64,000 bases of DNA from Podarcis liolepis (GCA_965112155.1 OZ218101.1); one strand, 5' to 3'; positions 19,301-25,300 are shown, counted from the first letter of the stretch. Numbers and translations: made by a program. The notes: generated from the letters alone by a model not told the origin.

Positions 19301-22300
19301 TTACCTTTAAAATGAACAAATGTAACAGTGCCCTAAAACCCCAAACACTAACGTTTGAGCAGAACAGTAGTAAACCTGGTTTTATGAGTTCTACCATAAA
19401 CATATAAAACGCTTTACTGAAAAGGCCACAAGGCTGGCAAAACTCAAGAAAAATTGCCTGAATTCCATGTGAACACTCATAAATCTGCTCCCTTTTTATT
19501 TTTTCCTAAAGCACATTTACTATAAAACTCAGGTTTCCTCTGTTTTCACAGCAGCTAACACTGCAAGTGGAGAGGCTGCTGTTGCACTCAGTTCCTGCTT
19601 GTGGACTTCCTATAGGCATCTGGTTGGCCACTGTGAGATGGATGGGCCTTTGGTCAGATCCAGCAGTTCTTATATTCTTACTGCATACAATTCAAAACAC
19701 AGACTGGAAATTTCCACTTTCTCCCCAGAGATCTATACCACTGCTCTGGCCAATGGCCATTTGCAACAACACCCAGCTAGGAATAGGCAGCACTTGCTAT
19801 AATTGTATGATAAGTGGACTATGCTGTATCCAGCTTCCAGGGGGCTTTAGTAGCACAAGGGAGAGTAGAGTTAGCAAAGCACTTTTGTGGACTGCATTCT
19901 TAGTTTCAAAATGCATATAAGTAACAAGCAAAATGCAAAGTTTTTCCTTTACAGTGATAAGCTGTGTGAATTATTTAACTTAAAAAAAAAAACTAAAATC
20001 AATTCAAAGGAAGAACATCATCATTCAATAGGGGGACAGAACTTGCTCCTACCTGTGATAAGCCTAGATGAACAGAAGCAGTTTCTGAGATATACATTAT
20101 TTTGCCATCAGATGCTACCACAAAAACAAACCCATCCAGAGTCTGCAAAAGAGAAAGAAATATAATAAAATCTTACCACTTACAATATACAGTCAAGTTG
20201 CTTGTGATAATTTTTTTTTATTTCCCCCTACAGAAGAACATATATTTTAAAACATATTACCCAATTTGGCTTGATGAAGACTAGGTTAGGTTGATTAAAT
20301 ATGTGTATCACTTCCCACTAAAACATCCCAAAATGATTTATAAGCAGGTAAAATAAATAATCAAATTAAGTATACAATAATAAAATTAAAACAGATTAAA
20401 AACAGATTTAACTGTATTATATAATTGGTGCTGCCCAATTACTATTATACACACACTATAAAAAGTTAAATCTAACTCATTCTCCCCTTACATATGCTAG
20501 TTTTACAGCGGCAGCAAATTTAACATTCTCATGTTGATATTGGGTTATTATAGTACTTAGCAAAAATCCTGAGTTCTTATGGGGGAAACCAATCCCAATT
20601 AATTGGTAGAAATAACTTATCACTATTTACAGTTTTAATGATTCCTGAGTGATGTTTTACATTCTTCTGACTATTTTTATTAAGAGTTTTGTGTGCACAG
20701 AATAATCTGACAAGTGGCTCCTTTGAAACTTGTAATGAAAATGAAAAGAACATGAATGTTTCATAAAATAAGTTTTATGAAACCATAATTTCAAAAATGA
20801 TAGAAGGGAAATCCCTTGAAAGTTACAACTACCTTATATAATTGTTCACAAGTAATTCTGCAATATGATACTTTGACTGATTTCATAGTTATTGCTTGGG
20901 ACCTAATATTGCATATTTTAACCAATAAGATAAAATGAAGGCTCGGCAAAAATGTAAGTATATTGTTGTATTTTAAAAACACTAATCCTGATCACATGAG
21001 TAAATTTAAATCTGCTTCCAAACACCATTTTGAGGATTTGGGTATGAGTCACAAAAGGAAAGGCATCTCAGTCCCAGAAACATGTATTTGGAAACAAGCT
21101 CTGCTGATTTCAGGGAAGAACCTTAATGCACTAGAATACCATTTCATATGCAGCAGGTCCCAGATTTAATCCCTGGCATTGCCTTTTGAAGAATCTCAGG
21201 TAGCAAAGTAGGTAAAGTTCAAAAAAGCCTGCCAATCAGAATGGAGCAATGATTTGAGAGAGGTGCCACAGCTGACAGCAGAGCATCAAAGGTCTCAAGT
21301 TAAATTGCCAGTTAAAGCATCTCAGGTAGGCAGGCTGAGAAAGACCTCTCTCTGTCTAAGACCTTAGAAGTTACTGCTTATCAGAGGACCAAATGTTCAT
21401 TAAAACAAAACCCACCTCTACACAAGTGTGATTAGACTATAAGAATTCTCCATATGGAGGGAAAGAGGTCTACATTTGAAAAGGGAAATGTATTTCTAAA
21501 TACTGTACATAGATAAAACAATTGCCTTTTATATTTACTAGTTCATATTTTAAGATGCTGGAACAAAAGGAAAGTAATAAAAGTCTGCAACAGAGGGGCA
21601 AGTTCAATGTTACCCCAATAAAAAATATTCCAAATTATTCTCTGACCTACTCTACTTTTACAGCATGTAATTAGAACCAGATTACTCTTTGGTTTCATTC
21701 CCGCCCCCCTTCTTCTGAACATAAACAAAACTTTGTAGCAGTATTAACATGGGGAAGAAATCACTGCTTTCTTAAATAAAACATTGCTTTAAAACATTCC
21801 TCATAAACTAGCAATTTGTTCCCCGATGTTATAGTTAGGCTGCATTGGCACTTCCATTAGAAAACCTTACTTTTAGTGGCTCTTTAAATACATGGCACTC
21901 CCCTCCCTTCTTTGCTCAAAGGTGAAAGCACACATATTTTCAGTAAAGTAGCTGCATGTCTTAAAACAACATTTATAATTCATAAATAACTGGACATTTT
22001 AAATAGTATTACATCATTATTTTGTGTTAAACACAATTTGAAAATAGTAAATTAAGAAGTTGCAGGTATGTTATAAATATTAAATATTGCAAACCATCTC
22101 AAGCATAAGAGGTAAGATACACATTTTTAAATAGCTAGCAAATAAATAGATGTCACTAAGCTTCTTACTGTGTGCCAAACTATATTTTTGAAAGATTAAT
22201 TTATATCACATTTTGTTTAAACATATATTGGACTTGCAGGTTTTGGTGTCTTCGGGTGTCTTCCCGTGTAAGAGTTGGGGTGTCTAGGCGACGTTTCGAC

Positions 22301-25300
22301 GAGGTCTCACTCGTCATCTTCAGGCTGGTGCTTTCGGCTTCACCAGCCTGAAGATGACGAGTGAGACCTCGTCGAAACGTCGCCTAGACACCCCAACTCT
22401 TACACGGGAAGACACCCGAAGACACCAAAACCTGCATTCCTGTACCCGTGAAAATCTACGAAAGCATATATTGGACTTTTGTCGACAAATATGTTCTAAA
22501 AGTTTTTTTTCTTAAAGTATACACTATTTTTCATGAAGTTGACTTTCTATGTAACAACATTATGACAAATAAAGTATACTTTAAGGATGTGGATTTCTGT
22601 TTTCATTAAAGTTACTTTCAAAACAGGTTACATTCCAGCAAAAAGTTCATTATACACCTCATTCTACATTAATGCCAAAGCATTTGTTAATGTATTACAA
22701 TTATATACACCCCACTATCCAATGGAAATTAGTGAAAATAATGAATAAGATATGGAAACCTTTATCATAGTGTCTGCTTATTCAAGTTTCAGAAGGCCCT
22801 GCAAATGTCATCTGCTAGTAAAATGTGGTTGAAAAGTTTAAGAACCAAGGGTGCAACACTAACCCCCTTACCTAGGAGTAAACCCCATTGAATTAAATGG
22901 GAATTACTTCTGAGTAGACATGGTTAGAACAGTGGCATAAAGCATAACTCAACCCTTACCTCCTATTTTCAGGGCTACCTTTACCAACATGCAAAAAGGT
23001 TACAATAGTGAGTGTAAGATGAATTATAGTAGTTTTGAAAAACAGTTTATTGTTTTATTTTTCCAGTTTCACCTACTCAAGGCTGCATTTCTCTTTATTA
23101 TACCTGTAAAATCAGGAGGAATTTACTAGCAAAAAAACCTTTTGTGAGGTGAGCACACGCATGATACCCTTTGCAGCATTGGGACTTACACAATAGAGAG
23201 AAGCAGAATTCCAAAGTGGATCAACCAGATTTTGAACAACTGTATTTTCAGGTGCTAACGTCAATGGAAGATCTAATCCAGATGTTCTCCTCCCACCACA
23301 GGAGCCATGCGTTCTTTTAAAGGTTTTCCCTACTGAGCAATGAGTGAACTGAAATCTCCCATTAAAAATGCATGTTTGTGTATAGCTATAGATATGCAGC
23401 TGTTTAAAAAGAGCCTATTGCAGCACATATAGATTGACTGAAATTCGTGTATATGCAAGCATATATTATAAATTACAAGTCACTAGGGTTTCTTGCCCAT
23501 TTATGCCACTTGATTTATGGTTGTCCTGCAAACACAAGATCCTCTCATTCTTTTATTTTGCATTAACCCATTCATTGCCACTCCCTAATTCTGTACTCCC
23601 AAACCATAATAAACCCGGACTGGAAGTCCCAATCTACCCCTAAGAAGAGGGAGCTGGCCAGCATGTGCCCAATTTCTCTGCGACAGGTTTGTTCACAAGC
23701 CACAGTTACTAGACTCATGGACCATCTCTTCCCTTTCTCCTTTGAAACAAAAAAAGGCGGCTCTCTCCAGGGGACCGAGCCTTGGGTTTGGGGGCGAGAT
23801 CTAGTGTTTTAACGCAACGAACTCCTGAAATAACACAAACAGTATTGAAGAAGCAGCACGAATCGCAGACACTCTACCTGAAGCAAATGCGAGCCCAGCT
23901 CCTTCGCGACATTATCCAAGGGGCCTAATCTGCTCGGCTGGCCCCAGGCGTCTCCCAGACCTAGAAAAGGAACCGAGAAGCCTCAGTTAACGCACATGAA
24001 TACAGTTCATCTGAAGCACTAGCGGGAGGTGCAATTTGGCCTTTTTCCTCTGCAGCAGAGGGAGAGAAGCAGCGTAACATTGGCTGGGTCATATTAGGGG
24101 GAGCTGGGCCTCCCTGCCCTGCCTGTGCAGTTCCCCGAGCGGGTTTCTCGGCGAGTTAGGTGGTCTTTTCCTCAGGAAAGTTAGCTCCATGACATTAGGG
24201 TTTAGATTCAGCTGAAGGCCGCCACGTTGCGAAAGGGCCTGGCCGGCCCACATGTTACTCAGGGTTCGGTTGCCATTTTAGAGCTGGGGGTGATCCCCCA
24301 CAAAGTAACATAAGCCTCCCTGAAATCGGCCGAGGGGACCTCGCTAAAGACGCCCTGAAAAAGAGTTTTGTACTCTCCCCTCTTCCCCCACACCGCCCCC
24401 GCCATCTTCCCACAAGCCCTTGCGAAGGGAGGCTACGGAGGCAAAAGGCAGCCCAGCTATGCAGTATTATTGCCTTGGTGCTTTTAAGTGCAAACGTTTG
24501 GTCCCTTCACTCAAACCCCCGCTGCTGTCGCTTCGGCAAATCCATCCATTTGCCCCTTTCACAAATCCTTCCGATTCAAGACCTCCCCACCTATATAACT
24601 TGACTTTGGGCGGAACGGTTTGCTAGCAAACCGTGCAGCTCCTGTTAATTGGACATATTATATCCCCCCTTTAGATTTCTAAGAAATAATCAGTTAGACC
24701 CAGTGAAATCAATGAAGTTATTTATTTTAATGGGTCTATGCTGTACATAACTTGAACGTAACTTTTCCGCCTTTTCTCCTGTGAGGGAAAATTCCCTCAG
24801 CCGCGTGAAATCCCCTCGTTTCCTCTACCCTCGGAAGTCCCTTCAGCAGGAAGTCTAGACTGAGGGTAGATGGGATCTCACGCTACTTATCCCGGGCACG
24901 GATCTCCTTCAATGTTACACATTTAATCAATATGAAAATAGGTTCTTGATTATGAATGGCATTGCTCGGACCCACTTCCTGACCCACTGAGAGGTTGACC
25001 AACTACCACAAAAGTAGTGGGATGTTAGGAGTAGTAGTAGAATAAATCAGATAATAGGGCTGTCGCTTTCGTAGACAACCTCCTAACCGCTTATTCTTTA
25101 AGGGGACCGATACACCTTAGCGCTCACACTCCTGGTTGTCTGTAGAGCGTGGACCACTGCTTCACTTCGGCTGCTTTTAAAATAATAATTATTCTTTAAA
25201 TAGTGATCGACACCGTGCTCTGTGTAAGCGGATGGCCGAAGCCTCTTTCACCAAAGAGAGGTCATAACATAATGCCCTTAACTTCAACACGGCCATTTCA

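What the first reader, a model, noticed from the sequence alone, without database searches (positions are those of the whole stretch)
22222..22477. Perfect 96-bp palindrome with a hammerhead ribozyme core in each arm, inserted in SIM2 intron 2
Seen: arms 22235-22330 and 22341-22436 are exact reverse complements around a 10-nt spacer, followed by a 28-nt tail (TTCCTGTACCCGTGAAAATCTACGAAAG). The unit is flanked by a 13-bp duplication (CATATATTGGACT) and is CpG-rich in AT-rich DNA, so it is probably very young. Each arm reads CTGAAGA-T-GACGAG-TGAGAC-CTCGTC-GAAA-CG-TC. Established: Penelope-like elements leave inverted pLTR-plus-tail structures and carry minimal type-I hammerheads with a palindromic stem III that works as a dimer. 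Inference: this is a non-coding PLE-derived or retrozyme-like mobile unit. Transcription of either strand gives one ribozyme core plus its perfect antisense, so in SIM2 pre-mRNA the ribozyme would be locked in a 96-bp duplex, a possible self-silencing arrangement that lets a self-cleaving element sit in a developmental gene.
Basis: partly seen in the sequence, partly recalled or inferred. Interest (0 to 1): 0.85.

Follow-up and report, generated by a model that had tools for sequence, protein, structure and literature searches.

The report
Young dead-end Penelope retroelement insertion
This is a very recent, still polymorphic 230-bp stump of a Penelope-like retrotransposon, made of two head-to-head copies of the element's ribozyme-bearing start, sitting in a SIM2 intron; it is an ordinary product of how these elements insert and shows no sign of a working ribozyme switch.

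Summary
Arms 22235-22330 and 22341-22436 are 100% complementary, with a 10-nt spacer, a 28-nt tail and a 13-14-bp target-site duplication. CpG o/e is 1.03 in the element and 0.34 in the flanks. The site lies in intron 2 of a SIM2-like bHLH-PAS gene on the minus strand.

Another sample of the same organism and a sister organism carry the exact empty site, so the insertion is real, derived and polymorphic. The sequence belongs to a family of roughly 10^3-10^4 copies.

Each arm is the pLTR/ORF junction of a Poseidon/Penelope-type PLE. Its layout matches the characterised anole element PAc:
- the ATG sits in the hammerhead core (CTGAAG-ATG);
- the cut site is 28 nt into the ORF;
- the outer ends fall at ORF +83 and +111, matching PAc's two internal reverse-transcription start sites, so the tail is the stretch between them.

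The hammerhead has every core residue and the known PLE quirks (bulged U, 6-bp helix II, ACGU helix III, 2-bp helix I), but Rfam does not call it.

Best reading: both nicked target strands primed cDNA, and the two cDNAs were joined by fold-back or template jump. The copy is dead on arrival. The retrozyme and adaptive "self-silencing" readings are not supported. Unchecked first-reader notes of this scan report many similar palindromes elsewhere in this genome.

The parts
22222..22234 (+). Left copy of the target-site duplication CATATATTGGACT. T22235 is ambiguous between the TSD and the arm.
   Evidence: The empty-site contigs in X4 and X7 join 22221 to 22465 with 14 ambiguous letters.
22235..22340 (-). 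Inverted 5'-truncated PLE copy, 106 nt, with its sense on the minus strand. It runs from ORF +83 (outer end, no tail) back to -23 upstream of the ATG.
   Evidence: Other family copies read ...GTAACAAGAAGCCGAAAG|CACCAGCC in sense (loose ends at 22341), so the spacer belongs to this copy.
22288..22325 (-). Hammerhead motif of the left copy, the mirror of 22346-22383. The predicted cut lies after C22290 on the minus strand. This is the copy read in sense in SIM2 pre-mRNA.
22331..22340 (-). The '10-nt spacer' CTTTCGGCTT is the reverse complement of pLTR sequence AAGCCGAAAG, that is, the extra 10 nt of the left copy. It forms the loop of the palindrome. C22341 fits both continuations (1-nt microhomology).
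   Evidence: loose ends at 22334 and 22341 in X1, X4, X7, X23.
22341..22464 (+). Sense 5'-truncated PLE copy, 124 nt, from -13 to ORF +111, including the tail.
   Evidence: The 96 nt shared with the left copy are identical.
22346..22383 (+). Hammerhead motif of the right copy: GC (helix I 5'), CTGAAGA 22348-22354, bulged T 22355, helix II 22356-22361/22368-22373, loop 22362-22367, GAAA 22374-22377, CG 22378-22379, TC 22380-22381 (predicted cut after C22381), GC (helix I 3').
   Evidence: The layout matches the Poseidon_Ac junction CTGAGGA-T-GCCTGC-CATAGAT-GTGGGC-GAAA-CG-TC.
22354..22464 (+). First 37 codons of the PLE ORF ([37 protein letters not shown]). The ATG overlaps A9 and the bulged U of the hammerhead.
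   Evidence: phmmer hit P0001 is 68% identical over residues 1-37 and continues QISDLYGEE.... tblastn of P0001 hits only the two arms.
22437..22464 (+). 28-nt tail, ORF +84 to +111, present at one end only. It is the stretch between the two reverse-transcription start sites.
   Evidence: Other copies end either at 22436/7 or at about 22464-71, followed by (AT)n. PMC11167929.
22465..22477 (+). Right copy of the target-site duplication.
23878..23958 (-). Host exon 2 of the SIM2-like gene ([27 protein letters not shown]), 1.4 kb from the insert.
20053..20142 (-). Host exon 3 (the PAS fold begins here), 2.1 kb from the insert.

Best explanation
The 230-bp insert is a dead-on-arrival insertion product of an abundant, recently active Penelope-like retrotransposon of the Penelope/Poseidon type. 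The element's GIY-YIG endonuclease made staggered nicks 13-14 bp apart in an AT-rich target (CATATATTGGACTT). Each of the two 3' ends primed reverse transcription inside the element RNA. The bottom-strand end started at ORF +111, giving the right, tailed end. The top-strand end started at the neighbouring site +83, giving the left, untailed end. Both cDNAs stopped about 100 nt later, just upstream of the ATG and hammerhead. They were then joined head to head, most likely because the top-strand cDNA (10 nt longer) folded back or jumped with 1 nt of microhomology, and its sense extension paired with the other cDNA. The hammerhead motifs and ORF starts are simply what lies in that stretch of the element. 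The copy cannot move again, does nothing for SIM2, and can form a 96-bp hairpin in SIM2 pre-mRNA. Shown: the structure, the TSD and empty site, the family abundance and its two family-wide termini, and homology to PLE. Inferred: priming on both strands in vivo, and how the inner junction formed.
For: Structure and TSD. Precise empty site in X4 (same organism, other sample) and X7 (sister organism), with X1 contigs running through both junctions. Family depth is 10^5-10^6 against 44.5 for the flank and rises towards the tail (a 5'-truncation gradient), and other copies end at 22436/7 or about 22464-71 next to (AT)n. The 37-codon ORF start is 68% identical to the N-terminus of P0001. By my ungapped count, P0001 residues 33-81 match 26/49 residues of Poseidon_Ac_1p 34-82. 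The geometry matches the anole PAc element: the ATG sits in the hammerhead core, the cut lies 28 nt (PAc 29) into the ORF, and reverse transcription starts at two adjacent internal sites 111-118 nt into the ORF with the tail between them. PAc protein also nicks and extends both DNA strands and prefers AT-rich targets (PMC11167929). An inverted 5'-truncated copy plus a 30-40-bp tail at one end plus a TSD is the textbook PLE insertion (PMC8557442; PMC3846280). Four other palindromic junctions of the family in X1 have truncation points only 7, 8, 9 and 17 nt apart (10 nt here), so near-symmetry is a property of the family. This fits the self-priming proposed in PMC3846280.
Against: The link to a PLE protein therefore runs through one 189-aa fragment at E = 6e-4 and a comparison by eye. 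Priming on both strands is shown only in vitro, for a different family. The central junction of this copy is not independently confirmed by reads. Rfam hammerhead models do not match, and helix I has only 2 bp.
Confidence: 0.85

Rival explanations
1. It is a retrozyme-like or otherwise non-autonomous mobile unit that is transcribed, self-cleaves and is mobilised again by PLE proteins.
For: It carries hammerhead cores and PLE ends. The family is transcribed in a sister organism (119 RNA reads).
Against: The two motifs are inverted, so each transcript has a single cleavage site and no monomer can be excised. The copy ends at ORF +111, whereas the PAc template needs the first 172 nt of the ORF. 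Single PLE hammerheads are inactive alone. No read ends pile up at the cut site (at low depth). The arms match the coding start of an autonomous-type ORF.
Confidence: 0.04
2. The palindrome is a selected arrangement, either a self-silenced ribozyme or a hairpin RNA/miRNA-like regulator of SIM2.
For: The hairpin of -213 kcal/mol dominates folding. Weak sub-threshold matches to miRNA hairpin models.
Against: The insertion is absent from another sample of the same organism and from the sister organism, so it is a new polymorphism and not a conserved feature. The same architecture arises at many loci as a by-product of insertion (unchecked scan notes). All miRNA scores lie far below the gathering thresholds (36.7 against 60 at best).
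Confidence: 0.03
3. It is an assembly artefact, a false fold-back created by the assembler or by chimeric reads.
For: PLE inverted structures are known to trouble assemblies. The centre of this copy was not independently verified.
Against: Contigs of a short-read run cross both outer junctions with 0 mismatches at single-copy depth. The empty allele elsewhere differs by exactly insert plus one TSD. Near-symmetric inverted junctions of the same family occur in independent contigs.
Confidence: 0.03
4. It is a fold-back DNA transposon or MITE with 96-bp terminal inverted repeats.
For: Perfect inverted arms flanked by a direct duplication.
Against: There is an asymmetric 28-nt tail outside one arm and a long 13-14-bp TSD. 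The arms encode the start of a PLE ORF and a PLE-type hammerhead. The family shows a 5'-truncation gradient and variable turn-around points.
Confidence: 0.02

Closest known systems
Poseidon_Ac / PAc, the Penelope/Poseidon-clade PLE of Anolis carolinensis (Frangieh et al. 2024, PMC11167929; Repbase consensus in its File S1)
   Same: The core string has the same layout: CTGANGA, a bulged T, a 6-bp helix II and GAAACGTC. The ATG is formed by A9, the bulged U and G10.1. The cut site lies 28-29 nt into the ORF. The insertion ends lie about +111 into the ORF, with a tail between two start sites. The target is AT-rich. The N-terminal protein region is homologous via P0001.
   Different: It is a different family. 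Helix II and its loop differ at most positions, with 3 of 6 pairs changed on both sides yet still paired. The first 37 residues are barely alignable to PAc. Helix I has 2 bp, not 3. The tail is 28 nt. No full-length copy of this family was seen here.
Typical Penelope insertion architecture (Evgen'ev & Arkhipova; Arkhipova et al. 2013, PMC3846280; Craig et al. 2021, PMC8557442)
   Same: An inverted 5'-truncated copy lies head to head with the direct copy, a 30-40-bp tail is present at one end only, the TSD is of variable length, (TA)n or AT-rich targets are preferred, and there is a palindrome at the inverted junction.
   Different: This copy is an extreme case. Both copies are truncated to about 100 nt, so nothing but the junction region is left, and there is no direct pLTR pair.
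PLE minimal/variant type-I hammerheads (Cervera & de la Pena 2014, PMC4209133), especially the D. virilis Penelope variant
   Same: All core residues are present. There is a bulged base 5' of helix II, a long (6-bp) helix II, a helix III reduced to A-U closing a 2-nt palindromic CG (ACGU, able to pair in a dimer), and a 2-bp helix I.
   Different: Activity is untested. Here the partner motif is on the opposite strand, so no tandem dimer can form in cis.
L1 twin priming (5' inversions of LINE-1 insertions)
   Same: Both 3' ends of a staggered break prime reverse transcription, giving an inverted segment inside one TSD-flanked insertion.
   Different: Twin priming copies two different parts of one RNA. 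Here the same region is copied twice, from two defined internal start sites, giving a true palindrome.
Metazoan retrozymes (Cervera & de la Pena 2020)
   Same: Small non-coding units with type-I hammerheads, thought to be mobilised by PLEs.
   Different: Retrozymes are direct or tandem repeats that yield circular RNAs. This unit is inverted, is partly ORF sequence and has one motif per strand.

Membership tests
Penelope-like element (EN+ Penelope/Poseidon type) insertion | Head-to-head inverted 5'-truncated copy adjoining the direct copy | tested here: met
   Left copy 22235-22340 (-) and right copy 22341-22464 (+), identical over 96 nt.
Penelope-like element (EN+ Penelope/Poseidon type) insertion | Short (about 30-40 bp) tail at one end only, equal to the stretch between two internal RT start sites | tested here: met
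   A 28-nt tail at the right end only. The two ends fall at ORF +83 and +111, and both are recurrent termini in other copies. Compare PAc at 111-118.
Penelope-like element (EN+ Penelope/Poseidon type) insertion | Target-site duplication of variable length in AT-rich or (TA)n DNA | tested here: met
   A 13-14-bp TSD, proven by the empty site in X4 and X7. Other copies abut (AT)n.
Penelope-like element (EN+ Penelope/Poseidon type) insertion | Hammerhead motif in the pLTR at the pLTR/ORF junction | tested here: met
   The core overlaps the ATG, exactly as in Poseidon_Ac.
Penelope-like element (EN+ Penelope/Poseidon type) insertion | [quoted passage not shown] | not testable with these tools
   This copy holds only 37 codons. 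P0001 (189 aa) covers only the N-terminal region and has no Pfam hit. Unchecked scan notes report open RT-EN ORFs elsewhere in this genome.
Penelope-like element (EN+ Penelope/Poseidon type) insertion | ORF start homologous to a known PLE ORF | tested here: inconclusive
   68% identity to P0001 at E = 6e-4 against 1.8e9 proteins. The P0001 to Poseidon_Ac match of 26/49 identical residues is counted by eye and was not scored by a tool.
Hammerhead ribozyme, type I (PLE variant) | Conserved core C3 U4 G5 A6 N7 G8 A9 ... G12 A13 A14 ... A15.1-U16.1, H17 | tested here: met
   CUGAAGA / GAAA / A-CG-U / C17, all present in both arms. None are expected by chance.
Hammerhead ribozyme, type I (PLE variant) | Helix II closed by G10.1-C11.1 | tested here: met
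   GACGAG/CUCGUC, 6 bp, formed in the MFE and centroid folds. Against PAc, 3 of 6 pairs change on both sides and stay paired (by hand).
Hammerhead ribozyme, type I (PLE variant) | Helix I able to form, with tertiary contacts to loop II | tested here: inconclusive
   Only 2 bp are in register (G1.1-C2.1, C1.2-G2.2), and no better duplex exists. A 2-bp helix I is described for the D. virilis variant.
Hammerhead ribozyme, type I (PLE variant) | Match to curated Rfam hammerhead covariance models | tested here: not met
   No hammerhead family appears at E <= 10 on 1.3 kb or on 80 nt, and none at gathering score on the window. PLE min-HHRs are known to escape canonical descriptors.
Hammerhead ribozyme, type I (PLE variant) | Self-cleavage at H17 | not testable with these tools
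   No pile-up of RNA read ends at 22381/2 among 119 reads from a sister organism. That depth is too low to conclude anything.
Retrozyme | Two or more hammerheads in the same orientation (direct or tandem repeats) bounding an excisable unit | tested here: not met
   The two motifs are on opposite strands, and the window holds no further motif.
Fold-back DNA transposon / MITE | Symmetric terminal inverted repeats directly abutting a short TSD of fixed length | tested here: not met
   A 28-nt non-repeated tail lies between the right arm and the TSD, and the TSD is 13-14 bp.

The most novel reading that the evidence does not exclude
This minimal copy and its siblings may be in-vivo footprints of a PLE-specific integration pathway. 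In that pathway each of the two staggered target 3' ends primes reverse transcription at a different one of the two internal start sites, which gives one tailed and one untailed end. The two antisense cDNAs are then joined after one of them folds back on itself, which gives near-symmetric palindromes of any length with a 7-17-nt loop. That would explain the long-puzzling PLE 'inverted pLTR plus one-sided tail' architecture from natural insertions, and would extend the in-vitro result for anole PAc to living genomes.
Probability: 0.45. Interest if true: 0.5.

Novelty: new member of a known kind. Interest (0 to 1): 0.27.

Why it matters
This insertion is one more neutral, polymorphic transposon copy in an intron, so on its own it matters little. 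Its value is as a clean specimen. It is perfectly preserved and its empty site is known, so every boundary can be read to the base: the nick positions, the two reverse-transcription start sites at +83 and +111, and a 1-nt microhomology at the turn-around. These boundaries agree with the only biochemical study of a PLE. A census of such young copies in this genome could test how PLE palindromes and tails arise. It also shows that a PLE family has been active recently enough to differ between individuals of this lizard group. Finally, thousands of perfect hairpins of this kind are potential sources of double-stranded RNA and of palindrome-driven instability.

Tried and rejected
- Rfam gave no hammerhead family on the whole window at gathering score, on 1.3 kb at E <= 10, or on 80 nt at E <= 10. 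It returned only sub-threshold miRNA-hairpin matches caused by the palindrome.
- ViennaRNA cofold of two minimal motifs did not predict the helix-III dimer, and the single arm folds no better than shuffles (z = -1.4).
- phmmer of the 37-aa ORF start against 1.8e9 representatives returned one hit, P0001. It has no Pfam family, and its cluster has a single unnamed Logan member.
- A scan of metagenome contigs for the tail found 0 matches.
- A scan for relatives of P0001 gave four loci (L001-L004). They share only the word DLYGEETFQ in an unrelated small acidic protein, so they are not PLEs.
- Searching this scan's findings by sequence and by place near the finding gave nothing.
- A literature search for the exact hammerhead strings found only unrelated PCR primers.
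I compared it by eye and say so wherever I use it.
- Complex prediction, structure prediction and the phage, plasmid and E. coli collections are not relevant here and were not used.

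
Full report
**1.

The repeat finder reports arms 22235-22330 and 22341-22436 as 96 nt, 100% complementary and 10 nt apart. It also reports the direct repeat AA[A/G]CATATATTGGACTT at 22219-22235 and 22462-22478. 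The sequence shows the 28-nt tail at 22437-22464. The 34-nt string CTGAAGATGACGAGTGAGACCTCGTCGAAACGTC occurs once per strand and nowhere else in the window, with none expected in shuffles. A relaxed min-hammerhead descriptor finds only these two sites. The element has 17 CpG at o/e 1.03, against 0.34 in 5 kb of flank.

The host gene lies on the minus strand:
- a bHLH exon at 42933-43109, which matches Pfam bHLH_HIF1A and HLH;
- exon 2 at 23878-23958;
- a PAS exon at 20053-20142.

The insert is therefore in intron 2, 1.4 kb from exon 2 and 2.1 kb from exon 3. Calling the gene SIM2 rather than SIM1 rests on my memory of the two N-terminal sequences.

**2. It is a real, derived and polymorphic insertion**

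I laid contigs of three DNA runs and raw reads of one RNA run on 21800-22900.
- **Occupied site.** In X1 (organism A, possibly the assembly's own sample), a 2.6-kb contig at single-copy depth runs from the left flank 29 nt into the element without a mismatch. Another contig runs from the tail into the right flank. X1 shows no empty-site joint.
- **Empty site.** In X4 (organism A, a different sample and study) and X7 (organism E), one contig each joins 22221 directly to 22465. It skips 243 nt, with 14 letters fitting either side. That is exactly the empty site with one copy of the target.

The central turn-around of this copy could not be confirmed separately, because the interior is covered by contigs from thousands of other copies.

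**3. It belongs to a very large, 5'-truncated family that targets (TA)n**

Summed word depth inside the element is 1.3e5-8.6e5 in X1, against 44.5 in the flanks. The ratios are similar in X4 and X7, and depth rises towards the tail. The tool warns that this is not a copy number, so I take it only as an order of magnitude: 10^3-10^4 copies, with the 3'-most part commonest, as expected for 5' truncation.

Loose ends show other copies stopping at 22436/7 or at about 22464-71 and running into (AT)n. The two outer ends of this insert are therefore recurrent family termini.

Two mirrored variant sites (22251/22420 and 22272/22399) separate subfamilies. All copies in organism E carry the other letters, while this insert's letters are common in organism A only. 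RNA reads from organism E (119 reads, all from other copies) show that the family is transcribed. No ends pile up at the predicted ribozyme cut, but the depth is low.

**4. What the arms are**

Loose ends at 22341 show that, in sense orientation, other copies read ...GTAACAAGAAGCCGAAAG|CACCAGCCTGAAGATG.... The "spacer" CTTTCGGCTT is the reverse complement of AAGCCGAAAG. It is therefore element sequence continuous with the left, inverted copy.

The insert is thus two copies of one region:
- the left copy, 22235-22340 (106 nt, antisense on the plus strand);
- the right copy, 22341-22464 (124 nt, sense on the plus strand).

C22341 fits both continuations. From the ATG at 22354, the right copy is open for 37 codons, up to the end of the tail.

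A phmmer search of these 37 residues against 1.8e9 representatives gave one hit, P0001 (189 aa). It is 68% identical over residues 1-37, with the first ten residues identical, and it continues ...ENLRK|QISDLYGEETFQLTR...LRNCRDKNVIP. By my own ungapped count, P0001 residues 33-81 share 26 of 49 residues with residues 34-82 of Poseidon_Ac_1p. That protein is the RT plus GIY-YIG ORF of the green-anole PLE, printed in File S1 of PMC11167929. This comparison is by eye and not a tool score.

**5. The geometry matches the one biochemically studied PLE**

The Poseidon_Ac consensus, read across its tandem junction, is ...CTGAGG|ATGCCTGCCATAGATGTGGGCGAAACGTC|AGG.... That parses as CTGANGA, a bulged T, a 6-bp helix II, GAAA, CG and TC, with the ATG built from A9, the bulged U and G10.1. 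The window has the same layout, with a different helix II (GACGAG/CTCGTC against GCCTGC/GTGGGC). Three of the six pairs are changed on both sides and remain paired.

Frangieh et al. 2024 report the following for this anole element:
- the ORF begins at helix II, and the cut site is 26 nt after the start codon (25 nt here);
- reverse transcription starts internally at two adjacent sites, 111-118 nt into the ORF;
- the genomic tail is the sequence between the two starts;
- the protein prefers AT-rich DNA;
- unlike R2 or L1, the protein nicks and extends both strands.

In the window the tailed end is at ORF +111 and the untailed end at +83.

The general architecture is described as typical for PLEs in PMC8557442 and PMC3846280: an inverted 5'-truncated copy, a 30-40-bp tail at one end, a TSD and complex palindromes. 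[quoted passage not shown]

**6. The hammerhead**

All core residues are present: CUGAAGA, G12 A13 A14, A15.1-U16.1 and C17. Helix II has 6 bp closed by G10.1-C11.1 and forms in the MFE and centroid folds. The departures from the canonical form are the ones Cervera & de la Pena 2014 list for PLE hammerheads, and in particular for the D. virilis Penelope variant:
- a bulged base 5' of helix II;
- a long helix II;
- helix III reduced to one pair around a 2-nt palindromic insert (ACGU, able to extend in a dimer);
- a 2-bp helix I.

No Rfam hammerhead model matches, even on an 80-nt search space. Thermodynamic cofolding does not predict the dimer. I therefore file it as a PLE-type hammerhead motif by anatomy and homology, with activity untested. 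The literature says that single motifs of this kind do not cleave alone, and that PAc's cleaves only with its protein.

**7. How it most likely arose**

*Shown.* The insert has a 13-14-bp TSD. In the usual TPRT geometry this means the top-strand 3' end (...GGACT) abuts the left copy and the bottom-strand 3' end abuts the tail. Both outer ends are family-wide termini. The two copies are identical. The left copy is 10 nt longer, and the junction has 1 nt of microhomology.

*Inferred.* Both 3' ends primed cDNA, one at +83 and one at +111. A single primed cDNA that merely snapped back cannot give this structure:
- starting from +111, the spacer would have the opposite orientation;
- starting from +83, the tail could not be made.

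The two antisense cDNAs then had to be joined. There are two routes:
- The top-strand cDNA folded back on itself at a 10-nt loop, and its sense extension annealed to the bottom-strand cDNA.
- The top-strand cDNA jumped onto the 3' end of the other cDNA.

I favour fold-back at about 60:40. Four other inverted junctions of the family seen in X1 contigs have truncation points only 7, 8, 9 and 17 nt apart. If the two truncation points were independent, with a range of roughly +/-70 nt, all four falling within 17 nt would be unlikely (about 0.004, a rough estimate). Fold-back gives near-symmetry at any arm length without needing two polymerases to keep pace.

**8. What it does**

- **Mobility.** The copy stops at +111, short of the first 172 nt of the ORF that the PAc template requires. 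It has only 13-23 nt upstream of the ATG. By analogy, it cannot be mobilised again.
- **Effect on SIM2.** Read in the SIM2 sense (minus strand), the antisense arm comes first and the sense arm second. The 256-nt stretch folds into one 96-bp hairpin (-213.3 kcal/mol, z = -26), against -19.4 kcal/mol for a free arm. This is a side effect of the insertion mechanism and not a device. The motif would be inactive anyway, and the allele is a new polymorphism.
- **Possible consequences, untested.** These are ADAR editing or small-RNA production from the hairpin, and DNA instability at the palindrome.

**9. Comparison and novelty**

The insert is a member of a known kind, a Penelope/Poseidon-type PLE insertion. 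I did not find this family's hammerhead sequence printed in the searchable literature. Unchecked notes of this scan describe many sibling palindromes in the same genome, of 150 bp to 4.4 kb. They include "one tailed and one untailed end" cases and open RT-EN ORFs. Other agents take the genome for a wall lizard. PLEs are well known in squamates, so the presence of one here is not surprising.

The retrozyme, MITE, artefact and regulatory-hairpin readings fail on defining features (see the membership table). The interest is modest. It is a base-perfect natural specimen with a known empty site, and its boundaries agree with the in-vitro model of PLE integration.

**10. Limits**

- Both metagenome scans were unproductive.
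- No full-length family member was inspected here.

Noticed in passing
window 22465-22479 (TSD) compared with P0001 residues 38-42: tblastn extends the P0001 match past the tail into the target duplication (HILDF against QISDL). Other tailed copies also share the letters CATATAT after ...GAAAG before running into (AT)n. The target may therefore resemble the element RNA just 3' of the +111 start site. That would mean primer-template annealing, contrary to the 'no homology' reported for PAc in vitro. The family's DNA beyond +111 was not available, so this is unresolved.
   Followed up: partly
window 22433 (loose end in X1): One contig from another copy reads ACGGGTATAGGAA before TGCATTCC..., a tail-to-tail inverted junction centred on the palindromic TGCA at ORF +80 to +83. 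The +83 terminus coincides with a self-complementary tetranucleotide.
   Followed up: no
window 22251/22420 and 22272/22399: These are two mirrored subfamily-diagnostic sites. All genomic and RNA copies in organism E carry C/G and A/T, while the letters of this insert are frequent only in organism A. This suggests a lineage-specific, recently amplified subfamily.
   Followed up: partly
window 22552, 22592, 22745: The empty-site contigs of X4 (organism A) and X7 (organism E) share three flank differences from the window. The empty haplotype is therefore shared across the two organism labels, through shared ancestral polymorphism or introgression.
   Followed up: no
window 22511-22585: An AT-rich imperfect inverted repeat (31-nt arms, 84% complementary, 13-nt loop) lies 35 bp downstream of the insert. 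It gives weak sub-threshold matches to plant MIR hairpin models. It is probably chance or an old MITE remnant.
   Followed up: no
window 22836-22900: Contig depth rises 2-6-fold above single copy from about 22,860 onward in X1 and X4, and an X7 contig breaks at 22864. Another low-copy repeat begins there.
   Followed up: no
window 42000-46000: GC content reaches 54-60% around the first coding exon of the SIM2-like gene, a CpG-island-like promoter region that contrasts with 34-41% GC in introns 2-4.
   Followed up: no
L001-L004 (metagenome contigs): Four marine-type contigs encode a nearly identical acidic protein of about 90 aa (...EEEITDLYGEETFQDLLPGDTVQV...). It matched P0001 only through one shared word and is unrelated to PLEs.
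   Followed up: partly
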